Shown here: piece by piece, positions 31,611 to 60,440 of the stretch
Position numbering within the stretch: the stretch's first letter is position 1
Layout: each line of letters opens with the position of its first letter
From: Mytilus trossulus
Lineage: Eukaryota
DNA: 64,000 nucleotides
Direction of reading: 5' to 3'
NCBI RefSeq assembly: GCF_036588685.1
Contig: NC_086375.1
Coordinates: forward strand, 17,422,001 to 17,486,000
Position numbers and translations under genes: made by a program
The notes under the pieces: model-generated
Seen by the model: the letters and a program-made list of their open reading frames with translations, nothing else
The model's database searches: none
Told to the model about the DNA's origin: nothing

Positions 31611-31767
31611 ATGAAAATCCATGCTTTGGCATTGTGTGCTATTTTGCAATTTCCTTTCTGTTTGAGTCTGTCTGTAGAAATTTTGAAGCCAAACAATACC
31701 GGACCAGAAGCTGCACTAATTATCGTCCCTGGAGCGTATATTTCAGGATCAGCATATAAACCTTTAG
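31611..31767 (+). CDS. Hydrolase A exon 1
   Basis: ATG...CCT TTA G|gtaagt, 157 nt. Confidence 0.9.
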
Positions 31768-34700
31768 GTAAGTTAACATATAAGTTAAAATTAGGGATTA
31801 TTACTTGAACAAAACAAACTTGTATTTCAGACTGCAACGAGTTGTAACAAAACAAAATACTGAGGTTTAAAATCCACAAAAACATTTTTTGACTTTTGAT
31901 CTTGGGAATATAGTTCTGATATTGAACAAGATTAAGGTAGCATGATTTCATAAAGGAAACATTGATATGATAAAAGAAACGGTACCAAACAATTCTTACA
32001 TTCTTTTTTGAATTACACCCCCTCCCACCCCCCACCCCACCATTTTTTCTTTTTCAGACTAGGTAACACGAGCAAATAAAAATATGCAAACAAAGATCTG
32101 CATGGGGTCTAGTGCTACACATGATTTTGGATGATGATGGATCATACAGAGATTTTAAAATGAGGAATCGCTGTTCACCTTTAAAAATTTTGAAAACATA
32201 GGCTTAACTGAGTTATCTAATTCGCAAAATTATAATGGCAAGATTTGAAATAGTTGCCATAAATTGTGAAATGCATTTTCTTTACTGATATAATAGTATA
32301 TTCTGGTGAGGGATTGAAAATACTTCTTCGGTACTATACTTTAGAATCACGTCAAGTTGTTGCTCTGATTAAGTGCTGCATTGATATATTTATATGATTA
32401 AGAACTGTGATGCATTTGTTTATGCGGAATAATCAGGGATGATGCCGTTTGAGCAAGTGTCCACCAAATATTTTATTGGGCAACGGGCGACAAATGTGCA
32501 ACTTAATTTTCTTCTTTTTAAAAAAATATCCTTTCTACAGCAAAATCGTGCAGATTTATGAATAAAAGTGATTTCCCCCGTTATTCAACATTAATTTTAA
32601 GTGGCAACAGGATACCTATAAAACGAGAACTAAAGTTTCAAACCACTTGTACTTTAATAATTTTATGTTCTAACATTTAACTTTATCGTTTGCGGTGATA
32701 CATTTATAACTTACTGCTTAGCTATAACTTACATTTTTCCACAGCCGAAGTTATTCAGAAGAAGAGTAATCTGAAATTATGGGTTGCCTTACTAGACGGA
32801 TTTTTTAATAAACTTGCTAACCCACTACAGCTTCCTATAGTATTTAAAAAAGCTGTGAATGAGTTACAAAAAGCAGGTTATAAAGGGAAGAAAGTGTTCT
32901 TGGCTGGCCATAGTCTTGGAGGTATGCATATTATATTATAACACTGTATTTAATTATTGATAGCTAAATAAATATTTGATTGGTTTAGACTAGTACCCGA
33001 CGTAACATTGAACAGATCCTGACGCAAGACATCTACCTTGCACGAAGTAAAGCGCGTTGAAATAAGATATATTTAGCGTTTAAACGCATCCACACAGCAA
33101 ACTCATTGTCAATAGTATGAGTTTTTAAAGCTTAGTCAGGATATACGTATCTAAATATTGATAATATCTACTGTATTTGTGGATGAAGGGTGGTGGTTAT
33201 CTCCGGGTACAACGGCATCCTCCACAAGTAAAATCTGACCTGTTTTGCATAAAGTGGCACCAAAACATCAACAGATAAATTAAAACATGTGTGTTATAAA
33301 ACTTAGTCATAGGAAAAATTACATGTTCTGAGTAAATTAGTTAAACGTTGAATAGTAGTGTTAAAAACATCTATCAGACCGAACCTAAAATATCCATCTC
33401 CTCTTTTTTAAGTTGAAATATCATCAACTATATGTGAAGTTAATTTAATTAAAGGTGAAGTTGCAGCCCTTTATGGACAAAAAGCGAACCATATTTTAGA
33501 TGGAGTGTTGTTGTTCGCATCTTACATTACTAAGAACAACAAACTAAAAGAGTATCCATTCCCGGTTCTGACCATAAGCGGTGACCTAGATGGATTAACT
33601 AGAATAACAAGGATCGTAGATACATTCGAGTGAGATTAATTTTTAGACACTGTGTTTTTGTTTTTACTTTCATGTACTGTTTAATAAATGTGTACGTTTA
33701 AATGCTCCTCTGGTACCTTTCCCCCTCCTTTAAAGTAACAGCAAATATAAGCCATACAATAATAGTAACCATATAAATGGAAAAGACGTTGAAATAAAAA
33801 AAAAATGAAAATAACACTGTAATACATTAAAAATCAAAATTGAAAATGACTTACTAGTAATAAGAATCCTGTATGGAACCTTGTATAACTGAGCTCGTCC
33901 ATTTAGCGTATCTTTCTTGTTAATTTTACTATATTTTCCAATAAAGGTTTAAAAAGGGTTATATTGTTTATCATTTTTATTTTCAGGGAACTCCAAGAAG
34001 ACGTAAAAAGCGACCCAGAGCAAATATACAGGACACCTGTAGTAGTAATGGAGAGTATAAATCATGGACAATTCGCTTTGGGTCCGTTACCCAAACCTGT
34101 AACTGATCATGATCTAAATCCAGAGGTATCTCAATCTGTAGCATATAATACCATAGCTAATTACTCGAACGCATTCATGGTAGTCGTCCGAAATGAAACA
34201 GATACCAATGTAACTGAAGCTGAAAACATCTTAGAAGACGGTCATACGAAAACCGCTGCAATGATGCAGGTGAATATAATTATGTTCTATATTTTTAGTA
34301 AAATCTGTCAAAACAATGAAAAAGTATTGGTCGTTATCTGTGTTAATTAGTATTTTAGTAGAGTTTTTTTATATTTATACTTATGTATTCTGACCATTAA
34401 ATTGTTAAACATTATAATGTGGTTAACATAGTCGTTGAGGAAAGTTATTTAGAACCTTATAGTCTGTTCTCTGGCACAATCCTGTTGTTCTGTCTAGTAA
34501 ATAATGAGAGGTACTCACAAACAGATACCGGCCCGTCTTACATAAAGCAACGACCAATCCATTAGCTCATAGAACCACATCATATTTATGATAAATTATT
34601 AATAAATGCAAATGGCGTTATATAGCAAAGATTCGAGAACCCCAAATTTCATTAAGGGATTAAGAATTAGTTGTGGATATCTAATGATTGCATCCCCATA

Positions 34701-35332
34701 TAAATCCATGGCAAAGTCAATGATTTGCCGAGGGAAACCACAAAAATAATTCAAACTCAAACCAAAATAGTGGACACAAAATGACATTATTTGTTGAAGA
34801 TTCAAAGAAAGTTTCATCAGATATATAAAGGATAGATGAGAAGGAAGTATTCTGATAATGAGTGTGGTTTTGTTGTTCAAACTTTTGTTTAGTTTATTTT
34901 TTTGTATAGCTGTTGATCTTGGTTACTTTTTCCTAAGCGAATGTTTTTTTATGCTCTTTAACGATTAAATATTGTATACTTTGTATATGTGTCTGATAAG
35001 GATCTTGTACTATAAGGGAAATCAATGCTTTCACATTTTTTGTGACAATTTGAATTATAGGTTTAATTCGAATCAAATTATTCTTTTCATATTCATGTTT
35101 ATACTTCAGTCAAATTATTCTGTAAAAACTAATGTCTTAATCCCGCGATCTGTTTATAAATTTAATTGTATTTGAACATGACATTACTTTAGGAGCGCAT
35201 TAATTATGTTTTATATCATTTTAGCCTCTCTCAAAAGTAAAAGCTCTTGATCAAAACCCAGATTTTACCTCACACTGGACTAACACTGCTCAAGAACTCG
35301 TTGTCAGTCTGAAAAATATAACAGATGTTGAG
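31611..35332 (+). CDS. Secreted alpha/beta-hydrolase-fold protein, copy A; catalytic triad intact; only exons 1-5 found (300 codons)
   Basis: Exons 31611-31767, 32745-32921, 33455-33629, 33987-34269, 35225-35332 splice in frame. Signal peptide, IVPGA, GHSLGG, SGDLDG, NHGQFA. No exon 6/7 homologue before copy B. Confidence 0.85.
32745..32921 (+). CDS. Hydrolase A exon 2 (GHSLGG nucleophile elbow)
   Basis: ttccacag acceptor, gtatgc donor, 177 nt open. Confidence 0.9.
33455..33629 (+). CDS. Hydrolase A exon 3 (SGDLDG)
   Basis: aag acceptor, GA|gtgaga donor, homologous to B/C exon 3. Confidence 0.88.
33987..34269 (+). CDS. Hydrolase A exon 4 (NHGQFA)
   Basis: ttttcag acceptor, CAG|gtgaat donor. 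Confidence 0.9.
35225..35332 (+). CDS. Hydrolase A exon 5
   Basis: PLSKVKALDQNPDFTSHWTNTAQELVV...; 108 nt as in B and C. Confidence 0.9.
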
Positions 35333-36968
35333 GTAATATTATTTTCTATAATTTTTTTTTCAGTAGAACTTGTATAGTAGAAAATAATAAAATGGCAGAA
35401 GATAAATAAAGGCAACAGCAGTATACCGATGTTCCAAAATCATAAGTCGATAGCAAAATACAAATCCAGGTCACAAACAAAACCGATCCATGATCTAAGT
35501 GGATTGTATCCTACAAAAGTATTTGATGTATACGTAAAAATGCATTAGCAAAAATACCGAACTTCAATATAAATTCAACGAAGGGGGAGCAAAAAACAAT
35601 AGATCCCATTTAAATAATAATAACGTTATTCAGATATCATTTCTAGGTTTGGACGTATTGGTCGCTTTGCATTGTAATACCTGATAATTAAAATCGTATT
35701 AGGATCGGTGTATTTATAGCAGGATATGCTGACCATGTAATTTTCGTATCATTCTTGCGATTCGAGCTTATGTTACTTTTCCGGACTTGTGTTTCAACTA
35801 ACGATCATCTCGACACCAACTCAGTAATGTTCTACTGATGATTTCGGGTGCTATATGGTTTAATTAGTTCATCATTTTATTACGAACGCACACTCAAGCA
35901 GAGATCATCATATCTAATAATTTAATAAACAAACACTACAAATTATCTTTCACAAACTTGAACCCTGGATAACCAGTTGGAAAATTCAATGCTATAAGAC
36001 TGAATAAGCACTATTCGGTTGTTTTCTCCTGGAAATTCGGCTTCATCAACCAATAAAAGACTGTTATACACATGATCGTTGAAATAACCAACAACAACTT
36101 AATTTAGTAACTACCGAATCGAAAAAGTTAAAAGGCCAAATAAATTACGAAGTAGATTATTCAGGACCTATAAAATTGTAAAAGGTTTGCCGATTGAAGC
36201 TTATCAATCAATACCTATGATGTACAATTATGGGCTGAGCATCTCTACTTTTAACGAAATAATAAAGGTTTCTTTTGACATTTGCTCTGTATTGCAATAC
36301 AAAGATAATGTTAAAGGGGTCAGAGATATATGTCGAATTGATATGGAATATAGTTGCTATAAATAAATTAAATGTTAAAGTGAACGAAGTATAAAAACTA
36401 TTCTTGCAAAAAAATCAACTAGTGATGCAGTTCTTATACTTAATGCTACGGTTCATCATTAAAAGATTAATTGAACTGATCACCTGAATTAAAGGTTTAT
36501 CAAATGCTGGAGCTATACTTGTAATCAACAATGAGTTGTAGCAAGGGTATAACGAACGTCGATAAGGAAATTGTTTCTAGGAATGCATCACACTTTTATG
36601 GCATGCTGTAACCTGTCGTAAGACTTTTATATCAGAATATTTTTTTACATATAACAAGTCACCACAAATTAATCAAATATACAAGTCTAGTACGCTTGAC
36701 GCGCGTTTGTCTTACTAGGGACGCTGAAATAGTGATATCGGTTGTCGCATTGTTTTTTTTCAACACTGAAAATAATAACTGTTAAATTCCCAAGGCCAAG
36801 TCTATAGTCCAATCTGGTGATAATACCAATGACGCTCCACGGTATGGTGTACAAGTCATCACATGAGGACGATATGATATGAAATACATAGATATGAAAT
36901 ATCCTATTATAAAGATAATCACCTGATAAACAAAGATACACGTATTTGTATTTACTTCTTTGAACAAA

Positions 36969-37125
36969 ATGGATACAATATTCAAAATAGCTTTGTTTTC
37001 TCTGTGTATTCAATCATGTTTGAGTATAAAAGTGACTGTTATGGCTCCAAACAAAACTGGATTGGAAGCTGCAATAGTGATAGTCCCTGATTCGTCTATA
37101 TCAGGAGCAGCATATAAACCTTTAG
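36969..37125 (+). CDS. Hydrolase B exon 1
   Basis: MDTIFKIALF...AYKPLG|gtaaga, 157 nt. Confidence 0.9.
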
Positions 37126-40100: not shown

Positions 40101-43100
40101 TTAGCTTACAATACATATCATATGGATGATGTTTCAGCTAACGCAATACAGATTCGAAGCGCTCTGAGCTTATGGATTGCAATTTTAGAGACGAAACCAG
40201 GTTCATTAGCATTCCCTTTTGAATTCAACTATGCATGTAACGAGTTAGTGGATAAAGGTTTCCGTGGAGCTAAAGTATTTCTAGCAGGCCATGGTGATGG
40301 AGGTAGAACACATTTTTATGCTTCTTCACTTTTAATCTTTCTCATCATGTTCTCTTTCAGCAAAGGTATTACAGAGCAGAAGTACTATGAGATTATGGGT
40401 TGTGGTTTTAGAGAGCACACCAACTTCACTTTTATTCCCTATTAAATTCAACGGTGCTTGTAAGCAGTTGCTGGATGCTGGCTTTGAAGGCGATAAAGTC
40501 TTTCTAGCTGGTCACGGCTTAGGAGGTAGACTCAAATTATGGCATGATTACATTTATGATAAAACTTCTAGAAAAGATTCAAACCAATTTTACTAAAGTC
40601 TAATCATACAGAATTTAAAATGTTGTAATATACATTCGAATTTAAACCTTGTGCATGCCTTTTCCGCTTCTCATTTTATGCACAGTGACATGATTGCAAA
40701 AGAAATCCATTTCCATAGTTAATTTATGTACAATAAATTGCTTTATATTTTCATAATTCTAGACGTTCATTACTGAGAGAAGTTTGCAAAAGAAATAGAA
40801 AGTTTCCGGAGAACTCAATTGCAATTGTGAATACACTCTGATCTTTGTTACTTTATATAAGTCTCCGTTTTTCTGTTAGTAGTGGACTTCACATTTTCTT
40901 TTAACAATAACTGGATTTGCATTAAAGTTTAATAGTAATGTAAAAATATCTGCAACTTTAAAGAAACGAAAACAGAATCCTTAAAGGTTATTTCAATTCA
41001 AGCTATCTGAATGCTTTCTTATGAAATATCATTATTTTATTTTGTTTTCGTGTTTGTGCATATTTTTTTGAATTCATTTTATCCTGCAATTCGACAATTA
41101 ATTAAGACCTACTTACTATAATTGCTATGTTTGAATAGTGAACACCTATTTCATTTCCCAATATCCTGCTTCTGTTAGAGACGAACGGTGATATTATAAT
41201 TACTATAAACGTGACAGTTCAGGGGTCATAAAGGGCTGCATTTAAAAATTCCCCTGCTCATGAAAAAATAAAGATAATATTTTTTAATGTTTTACTGTAA
41301 AATTGCAGGATAGAAATAAAAGAGTTAAGTTACATGTTAAAAAACAACACTAACAGTATACGTACTCGCTACGATGAAACAGATGAAATGTTCAATAAAA
41401 AAGGAGAAGGAAACACCATATGGTCAATGACAATTCATAAGTCAAAACTACTATGGCAAAAAAACGAAAAGACAAACAAAAATCTAAGGAACACGAACTC
41501 AATATAAAACAGAGGTGATTTTAGACTTTCTGTAAGATAAAGCAGTTATGTTCTACATGTAACACCCGTCGTGCTGCTCGTGTAATGTATAAATCTTTTT
41601 ATAAACCTCTTTCGGTGTTGTCTCAATAGGGGAAATATGACGTCTGTGACAATTGGAACATATCCATGGTCATCTCTGACACATTTAAAAGCTAATTAAC
41701 GGTCGACCAAATGATGTTGTTGGTAAAACTTATTATTTTTATACATATATCGACAATCTACGTATGTTTAGTGTGTACATTTTTGTTTTAATAAATGAAT
41801 TAAATGCAGCTGAGAACGCATCAGCTATTTGAAGCAACGTCAATACGATAAAAGCACGGTTTTTGGGTTTTGCAAATAGGTTTCGTTTTAAATGTTTAGT
41901 ATATATTTGATATCTTTTTATGATAAACCAATGTTAAAAGAGAAAATTTATTTCATAGGTCATAGGGCATCTAGTTATGGCCATTCAATCTTCCATAAGA
42001 ATCGACTTGATGGAGTGCTGTTGTTTTCGTCGTTTCTCAGCGGAAGTTATCGGCTGAACAATTATCCATACCCAGTTCTTACAATTAGTGGGGACTTAGA
42101 CGGAGTAACGAGAGTAACAAAAATGGTTGATGCATTCGAGTGAGTGATGATTTTTTGTTATAATAATGATAGTAGTTAGGTAATATGAAGTTCCTTACAT
42201 ATTCGATTAACACGATTAACATATTGGTGTTCAGTGAAATAACAACATCTAATGTGGGATTACGAGGCGCCGAATGGGACTCTTGTGGTTTTGTAGACAA
42301 AATTCATTTTTGTCATGAAAAAAGTCAATTTTGTCAAAAAAGGTATGCAAGTATAAACTTATTTGCATACAAAATTGACTTTTGTTACCGGATATGGAAA
42401 TTAAAACACAAAATTGACTTTTGTGAGACAAAATTGACTTTTGTGACAAAATTGACTTTTGTGAGACAAAATTGACTTTTGTGAGACAAAATTGACTTTT
42501 CTGAGACAAAATTGACTTTTCTGAGACAAAATTGACTTTTGTGAGACAAAATTGACTTTTGTGAGACAAAATTGACTTTTGTTAGACAAAATGTACTTGT
42601 GTGAGACATAATTCAATTTGTCAATTTTGTCTCACAAAAGTCAATTTTGTGTCACAAAAGTCAATTTTGTGTCACAAAAGTCCATTTTGTATGCAAATTA
42701 GTTCACAGAATCGAAACTAAACTAATTCGCATACACAATTGAATTTTATCGCAGGTAACAAAAGTCAAGTCTGGGATACAAAAATTAGTTTTGTAATGAT
42801 AAAAGTAACTTTTGTCCACTTAAAGATAATTTTGCATGACAAATTTTAAATTTGTAGTATTCTACAAATTTTGTTAAACTGAACTCATTTTTGTTGATCA
42901 AAACTCACTTTTGTCCGTACAAAATTGAATTTCGAGTACAAAACCACAAGAGTCCCATTCGGTGCCCCGTAGCGATACTATCAAAATTTGATCTGAGATA
43001 ATTGTATCAAAATCTCAAACGATACAATTTAGATTTTCATTTTCATTGATTTTATTACTTTTGCTTTCTTACTTATTTTGCACGATTTCATCAACCATTG

Positions 43101-48158: not shown

Positions 48159-49413
48159 TTATGTATAATCTTGAAATTCATAAAATTATATGGAACAAGA
48201 TGAAAAGAGTCATAATTATTTTCACAATTCGAGTCCAAATAATTATCATGATTATGACGGTATGGAAAGACTATTTCAAATGCTGTAACGATGTGATCAT
48301 TATTTGGACTAACACAATACTTTATCCACTAAAAACGGAAACCACTCGAATATATACTGGAAAATAAGTCATATTTGAATACAAAATACAGAATTCAAAA
48401 CCACAAACGAAAAGACACAGCACAACACACCATCAAAACGAACAAACAAACAAAAACACAACAACCAAACACATGAATGCTGGATGTATAAACACCGAGA
48501 GGTGTCGAATAGCAATGCAAATTTACACTCTGTAAATCAGTCTCACTTGGGAATAGGTAATTTTCGGCACTCAGCTGACAGAGGACATAAAGTCAATCCA
48601 CAATCACATTCAACAAAGATCAGTCACGTCTCAGTCATTAATACAATAGAACGGACGTGCTTGGTCAGCTCCTCTTTACCCGCTATCTACAATGTTGGTT
48701 TACTGATGGATGGCTCAACGACTTGCATTTTTTTTATGACAAATACCAATCTGCACATACAGTTTAAATTCTTGCTTATGTTTTAAACCCACGCTAGCAG
48801 TATGGATGGGAGATTGTTATGCCGACTGTTGTATCCTAGATGATAGATAATAAACCGCCATTTCACTGTCTAACGACTTTGGTCCAGATAAAGCTTTCTG
48901 TTATCGTTAATAGTATGTCCGAGACTCATCGACCAGTTCTCCGTCATAGAGGTTAGAGAGATGCACAGCTGACCAACCTAGCCCTGAATGTAAGTAGCTG
49001 TTGTGAACGAAAAGAACTAATTAGTCAACAAACCAAAAGATTAAACCAAAAACAAAAATGGCGGCCATCATTTTCCAACTTATCATCATTAAGCAACAAA
49101 ATATTTTATCGCTCAACAAACGCCTTCGAGCACTGAGCCGAGCGTGCAAGGGTTTACCAGCAAGTCAATGTCGTTAAACCCAACCAGTTAGTGAGACGTG
49201 GTAAAAATGTCAGTGTAGACCCCAAACACAAAAGTATAGATTAACCAATTCGAAGTGGTGCAATAAAATTTACGGTGTGTCATTTTTAATTCTTCCTCCT
49301 CATATTAACTAAGTTGGAGCAGTTTCTGCATTAAGAGCACACTATTGTTTATGAAGTCCGATTTTTATTATTCATTTATTTCAAAATATCTGAATATAAT
49401 TATATTTATTACA

Positions 49414-49578
49414 TATAGATTCCACAACTGCAACAAGTGTGTTACGATATTTCTCCACTCGAGACAGTTAAATTTTATTATTTAAAGCGCGAGGCTTGCT
49501 GAGCTTTTTAAATAATCAAAATTTAACTGTCGAGAGTGGAGAATATCGTAATACACAAGTTACAAAGATGGGATCTGT
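49414..49578. repeat. Long imperfect palindrome (~70-bp arms), probably part of a palindromic non-autonomous element
   Basis: GTGTGTTACGATATTTCTCCACTCGAGACAGTTAAATTTT...TTTAAA / AAAATTTAACTGTCGAGAGTGGAGAATATCGTAATACAC. Confidence 0.75.
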
Positions 49579-50057
49579 TTCTCTAATGATTTTTATCCTT
49601 CCTTTTCAAAGATTTGATGGAAGTTGTGTACTTTTGATGTGACGTCATCAGGCATGGTCGCCTTTTTTCATGCCGTCACAACAAGAAAATTCAGATCATT
49701 AGAGATTAGAAATATTTTTCTCACACCGGTCAGGAAATGCGAAAATAGCATGAAAATTAGAGAATAATATATAATATGCTGTGAAAAACGATAATATGCT
49801 TCGAGAATACTGTATTTCGATATATATATATATATAAAGGGTGTTCAATAATGTCATACAGGTAGACCATGACATACGAATGTTGATTCTGTTATACACA
49901 TTATAGGGAAACCCTTCGCGATGGGAAATCAGCAACTGTTAGGTTCGGAGGAACCTTGTCAAAGTCATTTATTGGATTATTATTTCCGAAACATATTGAT
50001 AAGTAACGTCATACAGCGTACTCGTGTTTAGTTTGTGTGTGTACGCAAAGCTTAAAC

Positions 50058-50214
50058 ATGAACACTTTGTATTTAGCATTTGTACTTGTTCAAAATGCAC
50101 ATCTGTGTTTTACTTTATCTGTAGAAGTAGTAAAGGCAAATTGTAGGGACCCGGAAGCTGCTATTGTTTTCATTCCCGCAAAGGATATACATGGGGACAG
50201 ATACACACCTTTAG
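50058..50214 (+). CDS. Hydrolase C exon 1
   Basis: MNTLYLAFVL...RYTPLG|gtaagg, 157 nt. Confidence 0.9.
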
Positions 50215-53200
50215 GTAAGGTCAAATAACATTATAAATTACATATACGACTCTCTCTGACATTTGAATAGAGGGCCAAGGTACGACATAATATGTCTAAC
50301 TAAGACAAGTATATAATAATTATATAAATGATGAACTTTATAACTGATAAAAGAAAACTAACAGTTGTTTTACGGAATTGATAACCGTTTGTGAATTACG
50401 ATCTTTGTTATATCTCCAAGTTGATGCAATATTTCATAATTTCAATTTCTTATCATGATTTCAAAATCCTTGATCATGTTGATAGGGGATTGTTGCTAAC
50501 AAAGAAGTTATTACATCAAGGGTGCCATATGTTTGGAAGGATCAGCTTTCTCTTTACAAAATGGAGATTAAAACTGGTTTTGGTGAATATCGTGTTGATT
50601 ACAGCATCGCAATATGTTTGGTTATTTAACAACACATCATGTTTTTTGATTATTCATATTTAAAACAAAATGCTCTCCAAAAAGGCAGCTGCCAGATTAC
50701 AACGCGTCGGCTTTTCACGTGAACACTATTTTTACACATAACTGTATTCATAGACACCCTGAAATCGGTAGACGTAGCCGGGTACTTGTACATCCCAACA
50801 GCAAACAAGTAAAATCACAAAAATACTGAACTCCGAGAAATTGTAGATAAAAAAGTTCGTAATCAAATGGCAAAAGCTCAAACACATCAAATGAATTGAT
50901 AACAAATATCAAATTACTGACTTGGTACAGGAATTTTCTAATGTAGAAAATGGTGGATCAAACCTGGTTTTATAACATGCTAAACCTCTCACTTGTATGA
51001 TAGTCGCATTAAATGTAATTATAATGACAACGATAAGTAAACAAAACAAACAGACATAGTAGGTATAAATGTAAAAAAATAGGGCTACAGCAGTCAACAT
51101 TGTTTTATTATTTTAATCACTATAAACAAACATTTCCCATGTGATAAAATACAACGACAGGATACATAAGAACAGAGTCACGTCATCGGCCCAAAGAAAC
51201 AGAATACACAGCCACAGCATATGCGTAGCAATAATTTATTTTCAACGACAAGAATACACAAATTATATAGAACACTCAAATGACGGGATGTATAAGTACA
51301 GAGCCACGTCAAATGGAGTCCACTAAAAAAACCAGACTAAACATTAAAAGTAAAATTCATGAAGATACATAAAAGAATACTACACAACTTATTGAGATGA
51401 TAAACAACGTCAGTACCAAGAATCTATACTCCAAGACCATCGTGTATTCTTTTTGAAACTGATTCGAACTTTTTTTCAACAAGGTCTTGGTACCTTCCGA
51501 TGAAACTTTTTTTTTAGAAAAAGGACGAGACGTTCTTTGACATAACACTGGTTCATCAACTTTTTGCTCAAACACTGGTGACGTTTTACAAAGTCTGAGT
51601 AGTTGCTGTATGCTTTTAAATACCGAATAAGTTGGGAAATTTATATCCCATATGCAGGTGAAGTTGGTATAGCTACTAAGGTTGGGGAAATTGACAATTT
51701 AAAATTTGAAATCGTCTCGTTTGTCATAGATTATGGTACTGAGAGGTGTATATCAAATTCGAGGTATAAGTCCAAATATGAGCGGAGGAAGTCGTGTTTG
51801 TTGTTTCTTTAATTTCTATGGAGGATATATTAATGGAACTTAATCAGAAAATTTTGGATTATAAATGGGGAAAAAAACATCATCAAAATATCGGAATGTG
51901 AATTTAAATGACCAGGCTTTTTTTCTCTTCTTGTATTTTACAAGTGTCTAAAGGAACTCCGATTCATATAAAAATAAGAAGAGATCAGCAAGGACAGGCA
52001 CACTGTTTGTTCCAACAATGCCGACACTTTGTTGAAAACGTTTACCTCCAAATTAAACAAATAGGTTGTCAATTAGAAACTCAAGCAAACTGTTCACTTG
52101 TTCCTCTGAGTAGCATGTTTTACCTTGTTTGGTCCCTATTAACATAAAATGCCGTATGGTATTCCAAAGTAATATATTTATATCGTATGCTATCATTTTT
52201 ATGTTAAAAAGCATTGTGGATTATTACTTCAAACCCATTTTTAATTTCACACGGGGAATGTTGGTATACAGGGTATATACTGGTTAAACAAGAATCTGCC
52301 AAAAATTACGGAGAATCGGTCAGATTTTCACTTTAGTTTTTGTTGGTTATCTATGTTTTATTTTATTTTTCCGTTTTTAAAAAATATCTTTGTTTTTGGT
52401 CTCTTTAGAACGAAAGCAGGATAAACGAGCAACTGCTAGGTTTTTATTTACAAATGATTTAAATATTGCAGCTGAGGAGATCATACGGCGAAGTGATTTG
52501 AAACTATGGGTTGCCATATTTGATGAACAGCCATTTCTTGCTGACATGCCATTTGCATTTCTATCGGCATTTACACATTTAAAAACTCATGGATACAGAG
52601 GAAAGTCGACTTTCCTGGCTGGACATGGAGATGGAGGTTAGATTATATACATTATGGTTTTACCGAATGACTTGTCCATATGAAATATATATAGATGTAT
52701 TAAAGTGGTACCTACAGTACATGATCAAAATTAGTGTTTGTCAAACTGCTATATAACCAATGAAAACTTTCTGATAAAGTGGGTGGTTGGTCAATTTTTT
52801 TTGAAATTTACATATTTTCGACAAAACTTTATGAAAATTATAAGAGCCAAATTAATATTTGTCAAGGTGTTGGGTACAACCTAAAATAAATAAATTGTAA
52901 TCATTATGGGTCACAGAGGGGGTGAAGACAGAAGTTTTATTAGTATTCGGTCTGTCTATATATGACTTGAATATGATAAAAAATAATACAAAAAAGCATT
53001 AAATTAGATGATCCAATATCAGAATAAAACAAAAGTAAGATCGATTTTGTGTAACCAACATGTATAAAATAAAGTATTCAACAGATACAGTTACGTCTGT
53101 CTCATATCTGGAAAAGGCGTGAGAGTAAGACAAATAAGAGTTCAATGGCCTACATGAGGATCCATTTTTATTCATGGAAAACAAACTGGAAAGACTTCAA

Positions 53201-56200
53201 GTTTTAAATCTAGTATTGAAATCAAAATACATACACAAGTATATTGCTTACACCACAATACACTTCTATAAATGTTTTATCCGGATTTACATTTGTTAAC
53301 TTTTTTCTTGTCCGGTATTCTAAATTGCTTTTCTTAATAATTTTAGAGATCGTTGCTCAATTCATATTCCGGAACTTTTCGCAGTTCTTCACAGATTAAG
53401 CTTATAAACTGTCTGACCGACATTTATTCGTGTTTTATATCCATTGGGTAATATATGGTGATACTTTCGTCCTTCTACTCCCACTTTAACTTTTTGAATA
53501 TCAAGAACTTTTCTCGTGAAGTACACTAACAAGAACCTGATAATTTCAGCTCATACCATAGTTTCTACTAACAATTGTTTATTTTGAAGGTCTAGTAGCT
53601 GCTCGTTTTGGCACTTTTTCGAGTTACCTTCTTGGTGGAGTTTTGTTATATTCTTCATATCTGCCTGATGGAAGTCTTCTTAATAAGTATCCGACACCTG
53701 TTTTGACCATTAGCGGAGATCTGGACGGATTAACGAGAGTTACAAAAATTGTCGACATATTCGAGTGAGTTTTCATTTACAATTATCATTCATCATAAAT
53801 AAAACATGTGTAATTGGTGATGTTTTCTTTCTGAACTGAACATGTAGAACAAGAGCACAACATGTTTAATACCTAGTATATATGTACAAAAATATTTTTC
53901 TTTACGTCAATAAACTCATCATAGATACCAGGACTAAATTTTATATATACGCCAGACGCGGGTTTCGTCTACAAAAGACTCATCAGTGACGCCCGAATCC
54001 AAAAAAGTAAAAAAGGCCAAACAAAGTACGAAGTTGAAGAGCACTAAGCACCAAAATTTCCAAAAGTCCTGCCAAACACAATTTGTACTTCGGTCAACGC
54101 TTTTACACCCAACAAAGTTACAAAAAGAAGCATTCAATTCTTAAATAAAAGTCACCAACATGAAACACATAGTAAGCAGCCAATATTGTCCAATATAGCA
54201 AAGGTAAATAACGTGTATTAAAATGAAATTCTATGGACAAATTTAAACAAATGCTCAATACTTTAGAATGTAGCTTTTTATTGTATTGGTATTTCGTTAA
54301 AAAAATTAGATTACAAATTTCAAAGATTTGATTATTATAACCAGTTATGACAAAATCGAATTGTGTAATTTTGTTTAAAAGTAATGAGAAAAAAAATCAG
54401 TTATTTACTGTAGAACGAATGGGATGTTATTGTCACCTATATAAATATATTGTCCCTAGCCAACAACCTCGTTGACGGTTGTCTTTTTTTTTATATCTCA
54501 ATTAATTACCTAGATTGTATTTTTCTATATCTACATAGCTAATTTCCGCAAGTGTTCTAACTTGGACAGTTCAGACATCAAATCACCCCAAACCTACGGG
54601 TATTTTAAATGATATATTTACCCATATCCTTTTATTCCAAAACAAGCAGAAGTAAATCAAACCAAATACTTTATTTAGAGAGTTACAGGCAGATATTGCA
54701 CAATACCCAACACAAAAGTATAAAACTCCGGTAATTATGATGGAAGGTGTAAACTTCGGACAATTTGCATTCGGCAAACTACCATGGTGGTACGCTGAAC
54801 ACGATTTAACACCAGAGGTAACGCACTTAGATGCTTATCACACTATAGCTGACTACACGAGCGCATTCATGGTATCTGCACAAAACGCCTTAAAGACGAA
54901 TGTGACAGCAGCTCGTGCTTTTCTGGATCAGGGGTACTCAAATACTCAGTTATTACTGCAAGTAAGTCTGGTATTATATGGTTATATCATGTTTAAAATT
55001 AGCAAAAAAAAATATTAGATAAAATGGATGTCAAGTTGAAGCTTGTTTATTTGTTCTTTGTTTGGCTACATATTTGTTTTTCGTGATTGTTGCTATTGTA
55101 TTGTTTTTGGAAAATAAAAAAAAAAAACTAGAGCAAATGATGTAATAATATACAGCTCATTGTAATTTTTAATCTTTTTATTTCTTTCATACCTTACTTT
55201 TAGTCCCCGATTTTTTTTAAAATATATTACATTGTGGAGATCCCGGACATCGACCGCGAGTTTTTGTCCGTTTATTAATTAAGCGTAGGTGGCGTTCTAG
55301 TCTCTTTTCTGCTTGTGACATGAATACGTGATATTTTAATATATATCTTGGGTTTGAAAGGGGGGATACATTTGGTTAGTCCTTTATTTGACAACTTTGT
55401 ACTACCCAGCGGTTAAAATATTGTATCATTATTATTACGTGTACAGTTTCTTGAAGATTCAAGCAGAAAATGCTGAATAGTTATCAAAGGTACCAGGATA
55501 TTAATTTAGTACGCCAGACGCGCGTTTCGTTTACATAAGACTCTTCAGTGACGCTCAAATCAAAAATATTTATAAACCCAAACAAGTACAAAGATGAAGA
55601 GCATTTGGGATCCAAAATTTCAAAAAGTTGTGTCAAATACGGCTAAGGTAATCTATGCCTGGGATAAGAAAATCCTTAGTTTTTTCAAAAAGTTCAAAGT
55701 TTTGTATACAGGAAATTTATAAAAATGACCACATTATTGATATTCATCTCAACACCGAAGTGTTGACTACTGGGCTGTTGATACCCTCGGGGACGAAACG
55801 TCCACCAGCAGTGGCATCGACCCAGTGGTGTAAATAGTTATCAAAGTATCCTGAAGTTACTTTCGACATTCATGCAGAAAATGCTGAAGTTACTTTTAGG
55901 TGACACGTCACATTGATAAGATTTTCAAAACATGTTTGATCAAAAGTATAGAACTTCATGATAAATTCATACTGGACTATATCAAACAACGCTGGGAAAT
56001 AATGTTGAATAACTGTCATATTCCTGACTTGGCACAGACATTTCAAGAAGAAAACAGTGGGTTCCTGGTTTACGAGGCAAAAACAATTACAGATAGATCA
56101 TTATGTAATATGATTACTGCCCTATACAGATAAAACAAGTGAATGTTTATCTTTATTTCAGCCTCTTTCACAGGTGAAAGCTTTAGACCAGAACATAGAG

Positions 56201-59200
56201 TTAGTATCTCATTGGACAACTACTGCTCAACAGCTTATTGTTAATTTGCTCAATTCCACATCAGTTGAGGTATACTTCAAATTTAAGTGAAGTATTTATT
56301 TTCATTTGGTGCTAGACATAAAAAGTTTACCATAAGATTACGAAATACATAGTGATTATTTCATATAGAGAAAAAAGTAAAAACACAAAAATACTGAACT
56401 CCGAGGAAAATTCAAAAAGGAAAATAAAAAAAGAAAATATTTTGATATAGTAAAACAAATTGACAATTCAGGAACCTGTGATTCAGTCTTATTTGTGGTT
56501 ATTGTTTGTTATATTTTGTTTTCTTTAATTGTTTTGTCTTAAGGTAGATTGATGGTATACCGCCATCTTGGATTGTACAATCACAGTACAAAATCGGTCT
56601 AGTTATTTGCTTAAATCTGCAAATTTGGAGACAGATTTGCAATTCAATTGTTAGAAGTTTTTTTCTATTGAAAGAAAACTTTTTAATTGATTGTATTAGA
56701 CAAAATATTTTAACAAATATTATGTTCTTTGGTTTTAAAATAATTTTTTTCTAATGAGTCATTTAAGGGGAGATAACTCTTTTAGTACAAAATTTATACT
56801 GGGCTAATAGGGAATTTTTTTATATTTACTTTTAGCAAGAAAACAAGTTCGGTGACACCATGTTTTCTTTTTATTATCTTAAAACATATTATGAAACCTT
56901 TCTTCTCACAATTTATTTCAAAATTCTATCTCATAGATTTTTTTTTATGCACACTAATGTGTTTTTTCATGAACAAACTAACCAAATTTTTGCAATTTTC
57001 AACGACTCATATCTTGGAAAATAGCACGGTGACCCATACTTTTTATTAAATTTTTGAAAAGAGCATAGTATAATCTTCATTTTGGCAAATTATAAAAAAA
57101 ATCTGTCTCAAAAAATATATACTGGTGATCCACCTTAAATCAGGCCGTTTGGTTATTGCGTTTAAATTGTTCTACATTTTGTAATTTTGACATTATCTAT
57201 AGCTGACTATACGAAATAAGTTTTGCTCATTGTTGAAGGTCGTATGGTGACCTATAGTTGCTTATATCTACGTCATGTTGGTTCTGTGTGATCGTTAAAT
57301 CTCATTTGCAAGCATGCACAATCTTATATTATATTGGGAGATATTATATATTTGCAACGTCGGAAGAATATGAGCACATCCATTGTTGAAGGCCATTATT
57401 GGAAGTTATGTGTGTTGTCTCATTGACAATCATATGATATCTCCTATTTACAGTTAAATAATTGTTTATTACTTTTTATATCTAGTTTGTAAATCATGAA
57501 ACTGGTTCTGAAAATGCTAGAAAGGAAAAACAACCAAATCCATCGATTCTGACAGACGATTTACAGATTGTCAGCTCAACATCAATAATGTTTGATAAAA
57601 GACCGAAAGATAGCTCAGTGTATCCACAGAGTCCAGTGCAACTAAAAGCAACAATGACCAGTCAAGAAGAAGTGAGAAAGAGGATAGGAACTAACCAGTT
57701 TGGAGATCCTGCATCATGCCAGGATATTAATCAGGTTAATTTGTAGTACTTAAGTAAAATCGTGTAACTGGAACGGAAATTCAAAAAAAAATTGAATGAA
57801 ATCGATTTGTCCAAACAGATAAATTGAACATTAATCTACGGATTGCTTGATGGTGCTTAATGAAACTTCGTGCACGCTTGACTATATCGTGGTGGTGATA
57901 AATAATATAATATAAGAACGACCATACAATAAAATTGAGAAAGGAAATGGGGAATGTGTCAGAGCGACAACAACCCGATAATAGAGCAGACAACAGCCGA
58001 AGGCCACCAACGGGTCTTCAATGTAGCGCGAAACTCCCACACCCGTAGGCGTCCATCAGCTAGCCCCTTAAAAATATGTATACTAGTACATTGATAATGG
58101 ACGTCAAACTTAACTCTGAATTTTACACAAGAAACTAAAATTAAAAATCATACAAGCCTAACAAAGGCCAGAGGCTTTTGACTTGAGACAGGCGCAAAAT
58201 TGCTTTGTGGTTAAACATGTTTATGAGATCTCAACCCCCTATACCTCTAGCCAATGTAGAAAAGTAAACGCATACCAATACGCACATTAAAATACATTCA
58301 GTTCAAGAGAAGTGCGTGTCCGATGTCAGAAGAAAATAAATAAAATGACAATGATGCATAAATAACAACAGACTACTAGCAGTTAACTGACATGCCAGCT
58401 CCAGACCTCAATTAAACTGATTGAAAGATTATGTCTTCATCATATGAATATCAGGCACAATCCCTCCCGTTAGTGGTTAAGTATCATACTATCATAAAAT
58501 ATATGTCATGCTTACAACTGTTTTTTTTTTTTAGATAAATGTGTTAAGTTCCGATGCAAAGACCCTATAAGTGAATCAATATTGAAGCCAAAATATGCAA
58601 TCTTTAATGACCTAACAACAGTATCGTAACTAAAGTATATTTTTAGAAATAATATACTATTGTATGATCGTTCTTGAAAATTCGTACATATTATATTGAA
58701 CACGATCAAGCTGCTAAAAGCAAAGCATCCATTACATCGTACCACTTAAAATCCTTCTGACAATAGTTTGTATATTCGACGGCAAATCATGCATTACAGT
58801 TTATTTTGATTTAATCCTACATTTTGTTTTTCTGTGTGTAAACCATAGACATTTAAGTATACAGCATAAATTCATTTGAAGGATTAAATATAAAGAATGA
58901 TAAATGGCAAAATCTGTATCGCATGCTGTATGACCACGAGAAACCAATATCAGTCCCGAGGGCCGAAGTTCCCGAGGGCGGATGTTGGTCGATACGGATT
59001 TTACCATGTATTGATATGTTTATCATATTATTTAACAAATGTTAGCGGGCAACCGTTTGATTCTGTGGTGGAAGCCTGTAGGATTTTTAGAAGTAAATAA
59101 TGTTGTCTTATTACACGTAAAATTATAGATATTCTGAACATATGTTCTAGGCTTATTCACTCCGGTGTATTGATTTGTAATTATCTAACATTTGATGCTG

Positions 59201-60440
59201 GAGATGTTACTGTTTAACATAATAATGTATAATTTGCCCAAATGTTACCACTTAATATGAGACAGATTTTAGAAATAAATATTCTGATCACAATTTAGAT
59301 TAAAATGAACAATCTTGTCTTATCACACATGAACAATTAATATTTTGGCCGTATATAGACTTTTGTAATCATCTATAAAGTTATCAATCATAAACAGAAA
59401 ATATAGAAAGAAGTATATGTATTATCAGTTGTTGTTTTGAGAGATATACAGTGAATGTTCCACTCTCTTTTTCACCTAAACAAATATAACTTCGTTCATG
59501 AAATTTAAAAAATTACTCGCTAATTTTCTCCTTTCGGATAATGAAACTTCTCTTTCGGATGACAGTTGATGTATAAACCATGTTTGAAATAAATATCCTG
59601 ACATCAGCAAATTTGCCACCTCATCTCTCCCACCCAACCCCATCACAACAAGATCGTCGTCTAACATACTGCTGCTTAGCCCTCTTTCTGACTATTAGTT
59701 GATGTGGGTACATTTTGTATCATGCCCGGAAATACGGCAACTGGACGTCAAGGTATATGTCCAAACTTGACGTCATTTGATGAATATATTTCAATTGGAT
59801 AACAACCGAGGAGTTCCGGAAATAATCACGAGATGTATCAAAAGGGTGCGATACGTGGAATGCGATACGGTTTTAGCTTTGCGATACGGGATATGCGATA
59901 CAGGGTAGATGATACAGACTGGAGTAAAACACTCAATTAGATATACATTATTCCTCTATTTCGTACTAAACATATGATAAATGACTATATTAATAATATT
60001 TCGGCATGCAGATAGTTTGTTTCCCTTGTGATAAAACAATCGACTCTACGCGTATCTCCTAGCGTTCATACAGTAGATATTTCAAAATTACTTCCACTAT
60101 TTTCTAATTGTATCTTTTTTAGGATGCATTTACGCTAGCATTTTCGAAATCATCGAGGACTGCACAATCAAGATATCAAGCAAAGGGACGACCAATCAAG
60201 TTTCTTAAAGACGTAAACGTGTCTTCAAAAAGCCATTGGAATCGAGCTTACTTACATTTAACGTATAACAATACGGGACTTTTTGTGGGAGCAACTCGAT
60301 TCCACACAACAGAAACCAACCCAGATATCAGTATATCTGGACAAGATGACTGTACTTTATTATCTCCTTACAGAGTAATGGAATGGATATATATTGATGC
60401 ATTAAAAAATTCAAAGCCACAACGCAATAAAAGCCTTTGA
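50058..60440 (+). CDS. Secreted alpha/beta-hydrolase-fold protein, copy C, 484 aa; predicted catalytically dead
   Basis: Exons 50058-50214, 52472-52636, 53590-53764, 54679-54961, 56162-56269, 57486-57734, 60123-60440 in frame. GHGDGG, SGDLDG, NFGQFA; AATAAA at 60486. Confidence 0.88.
50808..51790 (-). mobile_element. Penelope-like element 3' end (RT C-terminus 51600-51790 plus ~800-bp tail)
   Basis: Minus strand reads YDKRDDFKF*IVNFPNLSS/IPTSPAYGI*ISQLIRY; tail homologous to 23510-24275. Confidence 0.7.
52472..52636 (+). CDS. Hydrolase C exon 2 (GHGDGG)
   Basis: ttgcag acceptor, gttaga donor, 165 nt. Confidence 0.88.
53590..53764 (+). CDS. Hydrolase C exon 3
   Basis: 175 nt, YPTPVLTISGDLDGLTRV. 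Confidence 0.88.
53910..54080 (-). mobile_element. Retrozyme subfamily fragment, hammerhead at 53949-53992, in intron 3 of hydrolase C
   Basis: Minus strand GCGTCA CTGATGA GTCTTTTGTAGAC GAAACCCGCGTC TGGCGT. Confidence 0.8.
54679..54961 (+). CDS. Hydrolase C exon 4
   Basis: 283 nt, NFGQFA, CAA|gtaagt. Confidence 0.9.
55478..55846 (-). mobile_element. Full retrozyme monomer (period 357 bp), hammerhead at 55511-55554, in intron 4 of hydrolase C
   Basis: TAGTTATCAAAG at both ends; core CTGAAGA...GAAACGCGCGTC. Confidence 0.8.
56162..56269 (+). CDS. Hydrolase C exon 5
   Basis: 108 nt, PLSQVKALDQ... Confidence 0.9.
56543..57134. mobile_element. Related Kolobok-type element in opposite orientation
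   Basis: TTAA flanks; shares CCATCTTGGATT, AAGGGGAGATAACTC, AAGAAAACAAGTTCGGTGAC and CGGTGACCCATACTTTT with the reverse complement of 17684-18273. Confidence 0.7.
57486..57734 (+). CDS. Hydrolase C exon 6
   Basis: 249 nt, PQSPVQLKATMT...CQDINQ. Confidence 0.9.
57928..58505. repeat. Interspersed repeat (aataaaattgagaa.ggaaatggggaatgtgtc family) in intron 6 of hydrolase C
   Basis: Recognised mussel-type repeat; short inverted match near 5545-5583. Confidence 0.55.
60123..60440 (+). CDS. Hydrolase C exon 7 (terminal)
   Basis: DAFTLAFSKSS...CTLLSPYRVMEWIYIDAL...TGA. Confidence 0.9.
   Translation, partial: DAFTLAFSKSSRTAQSRYQAKGRPIKFLKDVNVSSKSHWNRAYLHLTYNNTGLFVGATRFHTTETNPDISISGQDDCTLLSPYRVMEWIYIDALKNSKPQRNKSL

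What the first reader, a model, noticed from the sequence alone, without database searches (positions are those of the whole stretch)
31611..60440. Enzyme/pseudoenzyme array: one Ser-Asp-His hydrolase followed by two intact paralogues that lost Ser, His and the oxyanion Gly
Seen: A has IVPGA, GHSLGG (AGT 32912), SGDLDG and NHGQFA (CAT 34063). B has IVPDS, GHGDGG/GHGLGG (40293, 40516) and NYGQFA (TAT 43200). C has FIPAK, GHGDGG (52627) and NFGQFA (TTC 54755). B and C also share a 12-nt shorter exon 2, yet keep open frames, signal peptides, splice sites and the SGDLDG Asp. Established: G-x-S-x-G Ser and the late His are the catalytic residues of alpha/beta hydrolases; non-catalytic members such as neuroligin and GID1 act as adhesion proteins or receptors. 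Inference: one ancient inactivation followed by duplication and retention as secreted binding proteins (lipid or odorant carrier, immune, shell or byssus matrix).
Basis: partly seen in the sequence, partly recalled or inferred. Interest (0 to 1): 0.82.

Follow-up and report, generated by a model that had tools for sequence, protein, structure and literature searches.

The report
Mussel esterase gene with dead paralogues
A mussel (Mytilus) chromosome carries a tandem row of secreted esterase-like genes: one keeps the catalytic Ser-Asp-His residues, while its neighbours lost Ser and His long ago yet are still spliced, conserved and expressed, which is an ordinary but clean case of enzymes turned into non-enzymes.

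Summary
There are three tandem + strand genes with GT..AG introns.

B and C are identical to RefSeq Mytilus trossulus proteins of 477 and 484 aa. A matches the first 300 aa of a 323-aa RefSeq model.

The family is an uncharacterised animal branch of alpha/beta-hydrolase fold-5. Its closest solved structure is the esterase AroC, Z 22.8. It also carries a conserved C-terminal domain with no structural match.

A tree puts A as sister to (B,(C,D)), so Ser, His and the Pro-Gly glycine were lost once, before the duplications. D is a fourth copy 72 kb downstream.

B and C are intact in three to five Mytilus species, appear in transcript contigs, and keep about 80% of the family's conserved residues. 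The changes cluster at the active site.

Three points are new:
- Gene A lacks exons 6-7 in this assembly, although RNA of the same species carries them.
- B has two alternative copies of the nucleophile-elbow exon.
- Ser-to-Gly arose at least four times in the family.

The proposed binding function is untested. This is a new member of a known kind, of moderate interest.

The parts
31611..31767 (+). Gene A exon 1 (start codon, hydrophobic N-terminus, IVPGA turn)
   Evidence: Model. The joint 31767|32745 is seen in RNA contigs of 4 runs.
32745..32921 (+). Gene A exon 2, 177 nt, ends in GHSLG(G); Ser codon AGT at 32912
   Evidence: Joints seen.
33455..33629 (+). Gene A exon 3, holds SGDLDG (Asp)
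33987..34269 (+). Gene A exon 4, holds NHGQFA (His codon CAT at 34063). The reference allele has Leu (TTG, 34078-34080) where all four RNA runs read Ser.
35225..35332 (+). Gene A exon 5, the last A exon present in the assembly. RNA contigs run on from 35332 into an exon 6 that the assembly does not hold.
   Evidence: loose ends behind 35332 in 4 runs.
35333..36968 (+). Interval where A exons 6-7 should lie. No trace of them is present. It holds an 85-nt dispersed repeat (about 35400-35487) and RefSeq's cryptic last exon of the 323-aa model (36795-36866).
36969..37125 (+). Gene B exon 1 (coding part; an RNA contig starts at 36849), IVPDS
40138..40302 (+). Gene B exon 2a, 165 nt, GHGDGG (isoform X2, P0001)
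40361..40525 (+). Gene B exon 2b, 165 nt, GHGLGG (isoform X1, P0152). RNA contigs of runs X1 and X5 join exon 1 to it.
41959..42139 (+). Gene B exon 3, SGDLDG
43124..43397 (+). Gene B exon 4, NYGQFA (TAT at 43200)
43869..43976 (+). Gene B exon 5
44443..44682 (+). Gene B exon 6 (start of the C-terminal domain, first conserved Cys)
45360..45668 (+). Gene B exon 7 with stop codon (second conserved Cys, the C-terminal motif conserved across the family)
50058..50214 (+). Gene C exon 1, FIPAK
52472..52636 (+). Gene C exon 2, 165 nt, GHGDGG (GGA at 52627)
53590..53764 (+). Gene C exon 3, SGDLDG
54679..54961 (+). Gene C exon 4, NFGQFA (TTC at 54755)
56162..56269 (+). Gene C exon 5
57486..57734 (+). 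Gene C exon 6
60123..60440 (+). Gene C exon 7 with stop codon
   Evidence: The whole C model equals P0254.

Best explanation
The window holds three members of a tandem family of secreted two-domain proteins of Mytilus. A fourth member, D, lies 72 kb downstream. Each protein has an N-terminal alpha/beta-hydrolase fold-5 esterase domain and a conserved, disulfide-bearing C-terminal domain of unknown fold.

Gene A is the ancestral-type copy, with Ser-Asp-His and the Pro-Gly-Ala turn. After a duplication in the mussel lineage, the ancestor of B, C and D lost four things: the nucleophile Ser (to Gly), the His (to Tyr, later Phe in C), the Gly-Ala of the Pro-Gly-Ala turn, and four residues of a conserved loop. 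It then duplicated further.

B, C and D are therefore not serine hydrolases. They are nevertheless kept by selection and transcribed, so they most likely act without catalysis: an esterase-shaped pocket that holds rather than cleaves a ligand, working together with the intact C-terminal domain. B additionally offers two versions of the dead nucleophile elbow through mutually exclusive exons 2a and 2b.

Shown: the gene structures, the residue losses, the single origin of the loss, the fold, the splicing of A and of B exon 1 to 2b, and conservation across species. Inferred: secretion, lack of activity, and any binding role.

In this particular assembly, gene A is cut short after exon 5. This is either a deletion allele or an assembly fault.
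For: Gene models: B, B with exon 2b, and C equal P0001, P0152 and P0254 exactly. A equals residues 1-300 of P0249.

Fold and family:
- Pfam Abhydrolase_5 is the only family hit.
- The AF2 model of B has pLDDT 90.6.
- Best structural match is AroC 9eh6: Z 22.8, rmsd 2.5 A, 193 residues aligned. Next come chlorophyllase and PETases/cutinases.
- AroC is an experimentally active Ser-Asp-His esterase (PMC12177695). Its GHSLGG and LDG motifs align with those of A's orthologue.
- In the model, the Gly that replaces Ser sits between strand 99-104 and helix 106-116. The Asp follows strand 147-152 and the Tyr follows strand 186-189. These are the canonical triad positions.

Single loss: in the tree, the A clade scores 99, the BCD clade 99 and all Mytilus 100 (SH-aLRT). 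His changes once on the tree and Ser four times.

Selection:
- Amino-acid divergence between M. trossulus and M. galloprovincialis is A 2.3%, B 2.9%, C 7.4%, D 9.0%.
- A shows 15 synonymous and 7 non-synonymous differences against another Mytilus species. Using that as the local neutral yardstick gives rough omega values of about 0.1 for B and 0.2-0.4 for C.
- B is intact at 477 aa in four species. C is intact at 484 aa in three species and in a 1,594-nt transcript contig.
- Of 75 columns at least 85% conserved in catalytic members, B keeps 61 and C keeps 59. Both keep every C-terminal invariant, and the changes cluster at the active-site motifs.

Expression: A is spliced exactly as modelled in 4 runs from 3 studies. 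B exon 1 is joined to exon 2b in 2 runs.
Against: - No activity assay exists for any member of this animal family, so both 'A is an esterase' and 'B and C are inactive' rest on homology.
- The omega values are rough. They borrow dS from gene A, use protein differences only, and assume orthology in a genus with much copy-number variation.
- C and D evolve about three times faster than A and B, so some relaxation of constraint cannot be excluded.
- Expression of C was not tested with reads here. It is supported only by a public transcript-sized contig and by RefSeq models.
- No atomic coordinates were available to measure triad geometry or pocket shape.
- Secretion rests on hydrophobic N-termini, N-glycosylation sequons and one conserved Cys pair.
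Confidence: 0.8

Rival explanations
1. B and C are still enzymes that use another nucleophile or mechanism, for example the Asp that follows the former Ser position in GHGDGG, perhaps with the Tyr that replaced His.
For: GHGDGG occurs in B exon 2a, C and D, and independently in an Elysia protein. The triad Asp and the His that precedes the elbow are kept. Asp nucleophiles are known in other alpha/beta hydrolases such as haloalkane dehalogenases and epoxide hydrolases (established knowledge).
Against: - The Asp is one residue out of register with the elbow.
- B's alternative exon 2b has Leu there, and other Ser-less lineages have Met, Trp, Arg, Lys, Ser or Val, so the site is variable rather than selected for Asp.
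- The general-base His is gone and the Pro-Gly-Ala turn is altered.
Confidence: 0.07
2. B and/or C are decaying pseudogenes that only look intact.
For: Catalytic residues are lost. Branch paths are about three times longer than for A. C and D diverge 7-9% between close species.
Against: - Seven-exon open frames with all GT..AG sites are intact in three to five species that share the loss.
- Family-invariant residues are kept.
- Transcript contigs exist.
- B is as conserved as A.
Confidence: 0.04
3. Sub-question on gene A. Either the missing exons 6-7 are an assembly fault and A is a normal 488-aa gene in this animal, or they reflect a real deletion allele of the kind common in mussels.
For: For a fault: RNA of the same species (about 99.6% identical) runs from exon 5 into exon 6.

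For a real deletion:
- There are no Ns in the window.
- Neither the first 30 bases of exon 6 as read in the RNA contigs nor any A-type match to exons 6-7 is found anywhere in the 541 contigs.
- The reference allele also carries Leu for a 96%-conserved Ser, which all four runs read as Ser.
- Massive hemizygous presence/absence variation is documented in Mytilus (PMC7653742).
Against: Neither can be decided here, because DNA reads of the sequenced animal were not available.
Confidence: 0.5

Closest known systems
AroC (PDB 9EH6) and other bacterial alpha/beta-hydrolase fold-5 esterases (LCC and IsPETase-type cutinases); chlorophyllase
   Same: Same core fold: Z 22.8 to AroC and Z 20.0 to wheat chlorophyllase. 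Same motif order: Pro-Gly turn, G-H-S-L-G-G elbow, L-D-G Asp, late His. Same Pfam family, PF12695.
   Different: Sequence identity is only about 20%. The animal proteins carry an extra conserved domain of about 215 residues with two invariant Cys and no structural match. B, C and D lack Ser and His. No member of the animal branch has been assayed.
Cholinesterase-like adhesion molecules and other dead alpha/beta hydrolases (neuroligin, gliotactin, thyroglobulin C-terminal domain; plant GID1) - from established knowledge
   Same: They share the principle: an alpha/beta-hydrolase fold that lost catalytic residues and is kept for binding.
   Different: They belong to a different branch of the superfamily. 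Type-B carboxylesterase PF00135 and the HSL family do not match here. Neuroligins are membrane-anchored, whereas these proteins have no predicted membrane anchor. No ligand or partner is known for the mussel proteins.
RefSeq models LOC134710512 (A, 323 aa), LOC134710278 X1/X2 (B), LOC134709264 (C), LOC134710515 (D) of Mytilus trossulus
   Same: Identical sequences. The genes are already annotated as 'uncharacterized protein'.
   Different: Nothing in the names or in the searched literature notes the loss of catalytic residues, the single origin of that loss, the alternative elbow exon, or that the 323-aa A model is truncated relative to the 488-aa orthologues (searches found no paper).

Membership tests
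Alpha/beta hydrolase fold-5 (Pfam PF12695 Abhydrolase_5, InterPro IPR029059) | Profile match at or above Pfam's gathering score | tested here: met
   oyster P0008 40.4 bits, Pecten P0010 47.8 bits, D (P0005) 27.9 bits, against a cut-off of 27. B (P0001) is just under, at 26.6 bits. One search lists a precomputed PF12695 hit for A's orthologue P0178 and for B. Single exons score below the cut-off.
Alpha/beta hydrolase fold-5 (Pfam PF12695 Abhydrolase_5, InterPro IPR029059) | Canonical alpha/beta-hydrolase core fold | tested here: met
   AF2 model of B has pLDDT 90.6. VIA-align gives Z 22.8 to AroC 9eh6 and Z 20.0 to chlorophyllase 8fjd. Foldseek E is 2e-9.
Serine hydrolase with Ser-Asp-His triad | Nucleophile Ser in G-x-S-x-G after strand 5 - gene A | tested here: met
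   GHSLGG with AGT at 32912. It aligns with GHSLGG of the esterase AroC through A's orthologue.
Serine hydrolase with Ser-Asp-His triad | Nucleophile Ser in G-x-S-x-G - genes B and C | tested here: not met
   GHGDGG and GHGLGG in B, GHGDGG in C.
Serine hydrolase with Ser-Asp-His triad | General-base His after the last core strand | tested here: not met
   This verdict is for B and C: Tyr in B, Phe in C, Tyr in D. The His is present in A (CAT at 34063) and in 100% of the 45 catalytic non-Mytilus rows.
Serine hydrolase with Ser-Asp-His triad | Acid (Asp) after strand 7 | tested here: met
   SGDLDG in A, B and C. The second Asp is invariant in the 40-sequence alignment.
Serine hydrolase with Ser-Asp-His triad | Measured ester hydrolysis | not testable with these tools
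   No assay exists for any animal member. Only the bacterial relative AroC has been assayed (PMC12177695).
Pseudoenzyme | Clear homologue of active enzymes that lacks the catalytic residues | tested here: met
   B and C are 51-56% identical to A and lack Ser, His and the Pro-Gly glycine.
Pseudoenzyme | Kept by selection and expressed rather than decaying | tested here: met
   Orthologues are intact in 3-5 species. Divergence is low. Conserved columns are kept. RNA joins B exon 1 to 2b. A 484-aa C protein sits on a 1,594-nt transcript-sized contig. A codon-based dN/dS could not be run for B and C.
Cholinesterase-like adhesion molecules (type-B carboxylesterase, PF00135) | COesterase profile match | tested here: not met
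   No PF00135 hit for any of the 8 family proteins, even at E up to 1.
Mutually exclusive exon pair (B exons 2a and 2b) | Adjacent homologous exons of equal length and phase, only one per mRNA | tested here: inconclusive
   Both exons are 165 nt, in the same phase, and 57% identical at the amino-acid level. The spacer is 58 nt. The public isoforms hold one or the other. RNA contigs showed the exon 1-2b joint only.

The most novel reading that the evidence does not exclude
This animal fold-5 family may be a repeatedly used switch from esterase to non-catalytic ligand holder. Ser-to-Gly arose at least four times (mussels, sea slugs, abalone/vent snail, krill), each time keeping a C-terminal domain that matches no solved structure. 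In mussels the dead copies multiplied. One of them gained mutually exclusive exons that swap the dead nucleophile elbow (Asp or Leu next to the Gly), giving a small diversified set of secreted binding proteins, for instance for lipids, signals or microbial esters.
Probability: 0.15. Interest if true: 0.6.

Novelty: new member of a known kind. Interest (0 to 1): 0.4.

Why it matters
Catalytically dead alpha/beta hydrolases are a known theme, so the principle is not new.

The case is useful for three reasons:
- The live and dead copies sit side by side. The loss is clean, single and datable, and it recurs independently in other invertebrates of the same uncharacterised family. That makes a direct bench comparison of A with B and C easy.
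- It flags a family-wide C-terminal domain with no structural relative.
- It shows that the reference M. trossulus model of the only catalytic copy (323 aa) is truncated, which matters for anyone using that annotation.

Tried and rejected
- Exon-by-exon Pfam and PDB sequence searches gave only sub-threshold Abhydrolase_5 hits or nothing.
Exons were searched by reference. Public proteins identical to the models (P0001, P0152, P0254, P0249) or orthologous to them (P0178) were used instead. Exons were joined only inside local scripts, to check identity and classify codons.
- An alignment of P0008 with A's exon pieces (A4) came out misaligned and was not used as a query.
- The ESM Atlas gave no usable hit for the C-terminal part.
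- NCBIfam gave nothing significant.
- Literature searches by locus names, UniProt and ENA accessions found no paper. Broader word searches returned only unrelated papers.
- Search for A's exons 6-7 found none: tblastn with the B and C exons at E up to 50 on 35341-36968, the oyster protein and A's own orthologue against the whole genome, and the 30-mer read from RNA in the window and in the genome.
- A large transposon insertion as the cause of the truncation was rejected. Only an 85-nt dispersed repeat lies there.
- Correlated loss of Ser and of the Pro-Gly glycine: 16 of 21 Ser-less rows lack the Gly, against 0 Ser-bearing rows. This rests on only 3 independent pairs (sign test p 0.25), so it is not claimed.
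- ORFs elsewhere in the window had no Pfam match.
Full report
**What is in the sequence**

The window is AT-rich (about 32% G+C) and has no Ns. It is G000:C3:17422001-17486000 of a 1.3-Gb assembly.

Searching the window with the translated open frames of gene A found three collinear sets of exons on the + strand. tblastx between the three regions added exons 5-7 for B and C. I placed the exon borders by reading the splice sites and assembled the models in a script.

- A has 5 exons, 31611-35332.
- B has 7 exons, 36969-45668, plus a second copy of exon 2.
- C has 7 exons, 50058-60440.
- All introns are GT..AG.

The B model equals P0001 (XP_063426640.1, Mytilus trossulus LOC134710278 isoform X2). 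With exon 2b it equals P0152 (isoform X1). C equals P0254 (LOC134709264, 484 aa). A equals the first 300 residues of P0249 (LOC134710512, 323 aa). So the genome is M. trossulus, or indistinguishable from it at these genes, and the genes are already annotated as 'uncharacterized protein'.

**Check of the observation**

Exon 2 is 177 nt in A and 165 nt in B and C. SGDLDG is present in all three.

**What family this is**

Single exons gave only sub-threshold Abhydrolase_5 matches. A profile of exon 4 from A, B and C, searched against 1.84 billion representative proteins, found 178 proteins at E up to 0.001. Most full-length ones are 460-500 aa.

The named members are all 'uncharacterized' or 'Alpha/beta hydrolase fold-5 domain-containing'. 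They come from bivalves, gastropods, a brachiopod, an annelid, echinoderms, amphioxus and crustaceans, with more distant ones in dinoflagellates. Pfam finds only PF12695.

An AlphaFold2 model of B (40-sequence alignment, pLDDT 90.6) has a canonical alpha/beta-hydrolase core in residues about 15-258. Its best match is AroC, PDB 9eh6 (Z 22.8, rmsd 2.5 A, 193 residues, 21% identity). Wheat chlorophyllase, PETases/cutinases and carboxylesterases follow.

AroC is an experimentally active esterase of the fold-5 subfamily with a Ser-Asp-His triad (PMC12177695). In a sequence alignment, its GHSLGG and LDG motifs line up with those of A's orthologue.

In the model of B:
- The Gly replacing Ser lies between strand 99-104 and helix 106-116.
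- The Asp motif follows strand 147-152.
- The Tyr replacing His follows strand 186-189.

These are the canonical positions of nucleophile, acid and base. No coordinates were returned, so distances could not be measured.

**The C-terminal half**

The C-terminal half (exons 5-7, about 215 residues) contains the family's invariant Cys pair and a conserved Arg-Ala-x-Glu-Trp motif at the C-terminus. I folded it through a natural N-terminally short homologue, P0138 (pLDDT 89). It has no significant structural match:
- Foldseek best E is 0.07.
- VIA-align best Z is 5.1, and that match covers only a helical hairpin.

That is not proof of a new fold, but no solved relative was found.

**When the catalytic residues were lost**

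In a 72-protein maximum-likelihood tree (LG+C20, SH-aLRT), the Mytilus proteins form one clade (support 100). It splits into A (99) and (B,(C,D)) (99; B 100; C+D 99). D is a fourth paralogue at C3:17558784, 72 kb past the window (P0005).

Every A orthologue has PGA, GHSLGG and His. Every B, C and D has Gly for Ser, Tyr or Phe for His, and Asp-Ser or Ala-Lys for Gly-Ala. The fewest changes on the tree are 1 for His and 4 for Ser.

M. coruscus C still has Tyr, so the path was His to Tyr to Phe. The loss is shared by M. californianus and M. coruscus, so it predates the divergence of the Mytilus species analysed here.

Independent Ser-to-Gly changes, all of which keep His, occur in three other places:
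- a sea-slug clade (Elysia and unnamed transcripts);
- an abalone/Gigantopelta pair;
- krill.

**Are B and C maintained?**

- Open frames: B is 477 aa in M. trossulus, edulis, galloprovincialis and californianus. C is 484 aa in trossulus, galloprovincialis and edulis, and in a 1,594-nt transcript-sized contig. D is 479 aa in three species.
- Amino-acid differences between M. trossulus and M. galloprovincialis: A 7/300, B 14/477, C 36/484, D 43/479.
- Neutral yardstick: RNA contigs of another Mytilus species laid on A show 15 synonymous and 7 non-synonymous listed differences. That gives dS of roughly 0.08-0.14. Borrowing it, omega is about 0.1 for A and B, 0.2-0.4 for C and 0.3-0.5 for D. These are rough figures, because they use protein differences and a borrowed dS.
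- Conserved columns: of 75 columns at least 85% conserved among 45 catalytic non-Mytilus members, A keeps 69, B 61, C 59 and D 55. The changes cluster at the Pro-Gly-Ala turn, the elbow, the His and one loop. All C-terminal invariants are kept.
- Branch paths from the Mytilus node are about 0.25-0.34 for A against 0.84-0.94 for B, C and D. So the dead copies evolved faster overall but are now constrained, B strongly so.

**RNA evidence**

I laid contigs of four runs from three studies on window 31400-37200. Two runs are about 99.6% identical to the window and two about 96%. None covers the introns, so they behave as RNA.

All four show the joints 31767|32745, 32921|33455, 33629|33987 and 34269|35225, exactly as modelled. 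Contigs of two runs join B exon 1 (37125) to the first bases of exon 2b.

**Gene A is truncated in this assembly**

In all four runs the contig goes on beyond 35332 for 50 to more than 255 bases that lie nowhere in the stretch. The first 30 bases translate to Phe-(Val/Ile)-Asn-Tyr-Glu-Asp-Glu-Ser-Leu-Asp. That is the start of exon 6 in A's 488-aa orthologues of M. galloprovincialis, edulis, californianus and coruscus (P0178, P0247, P0177, P0264).

- That 30-mer is absent from the window at up to 3 mismatches and from all 541 contigs at up to 2 mismatches.
- Searching the genome with P0178 finds A's exons 1-5 at 78-94% identity over matches that run into the introns. For residues 305-488 it finds only the B, C and D copies, at 39-57%.
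- tblastn on 35341-36968 finds nothing.
- Only an 85-nt dispersed repeat lies there.

RefSeq's 323-aa model closes the frame with a 23-residue exon at 36795-36866. That exon overlaps the start of B's mRNA, and no joint to it was seen in the four runs.

The reference allele also has Leu (TTG, 34078-34080) where all four runs read Ser. This site is Ser in 96% of catalytic members, five residues after the His.

Whether this is a true deletion allele or an assembly fault cannot be decided without DNA reads. Hemizygous presence/absence variation is widespread in Mytilus (PMC7653742).

**The alternative elbow exon of B**

Exons 2a (40138-40302) and 2b (40361-40525) share these features:
- Both are 165 nt and in the same phase.
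- They are 57% identical in protein and 69% in DNA.
- They are separated by only 58 nt.
- Each is conserved in other species: 54-55 of 56 residues in galloprovincialis and edulis, and 48-51 of 56 in coruscus and californianus.

Public isoforms carry one or the other. The exon encodes residues 53-107, from the helix after the Pro-Gly turn through to the elbow, so the two forms differ in Asp versus Leu next to the Gly.

**How it most likely works**

A, in its full 488-aa form, is most likely a secreted carboxylic-ester hydrolase. This is homology only.

B, C and D cannot run the Ser-His charge relay. Because their fold-determining residues and the whole C-terminal domain are kept, I infer a non-catalytic role that still uses the esterase-shaped domain together with the C-terminal domain, most simply binding a ligand related to A's substrate. 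That step is inference, and no partner or ligand is known.

An alternative nucleophile is unlikely, because the residue after the Gly is variable (Asp, Leu, Met, Trp, Arg, Lys, Ser, Val) and the His is gone.

**Comparison and novelty**

The principle is that of neuroligins, GID1 and other dead alpha/beta hydrolases (established knowledge). These proteins belong to a different branch: no PF00135 match was found. The searches made here found no paper on the animal branch.

I file this as a new member of a known kind. It comes with three useful by-products: the truncated reference A, the alternative elbow exon, and the recurrent Ser-to-Gly change.

**Limits**

Noticed in passing
window 35225-36968: Gene A ends after exon 5 in this assembly. 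RNA contigs of four runs continue into an exon 6 that is absent from the whole assembly. RefSeq's 323-aa model (LOC134710512) uses a cryptic last exon at 36795-36866, which overlaps the start of B's mRNA.
   Followed up: yes
window 34078-34080: The reference allele of A has Leu (TTG) where all four RNA runs, including those of the same species, read Ser (TCG). The site is Ser in 96% of catalytic family members, five residues after the catalytic His. Together with the truncation, this hints that the assembled A allele may be a defective one.
   Followed up: partly
window 40138-40525: Tandem duplicated exon 2 of B: 2a has GHGDGG and 2b has GHGLGG. Both are 165 nt, with a 58-nt spacer. Both are conserved across Mytilus species and used in separate RefSeq isoforms, so they are probably mutually exclusive.
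   Followed up: partly
G000:C3:17554894-17564039 (L004, L007, L009): Fourth paralogue D (LOC134710515, 479 aa) with AHGDGG and NYGQFA, 72 kb downstream of the window. It is sister to C in the tree.
   Followed up: partly
G000:C9:50006308-50018154, minus strand (L005, L006, L008): Distant fifth family member with GHSAGG, GNLDG and NHGIF, about 30% identical. A stop codon lies directly before the open frame holding GHSAGG, and one protein match shows a TAA near the end of the last exon. It may be a pseudogene, or my exon reading may be off.
   Followed up: partly
family alignment: The C-terminal domain of about 215 residues in the whole animal family has two invariant Cys and a conserved Arg-Ala-x-Glu-Trp motif. 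It has no significant match among solved structures.
   Followed up: partly
family tree: Ser-to-Gly at the elbow arose at least four times in the family, always to Gly. 16 of 21 Ser-less proteins also lost the Gly of the Pro-Gly turn, while none of the Ser-bearing ones did. This rests on only 3 independent contrasts, so it is not significant.
   Followed up: yes
window 42408-42690: A 20-nt tandem array of 10 copies (42408-42613) is followed by a 3.5-copy array of a unit that looks like its reverse complement (42620-42690). It lies in B intron 3.
   Followed up: no
window 35400-35487 and 37150-37198: Short dispersed repeats. The first has more than 2,000 first-look candidates genome-wide. Many unrelated RNA contigs pile up on both.
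   Followed up: partly
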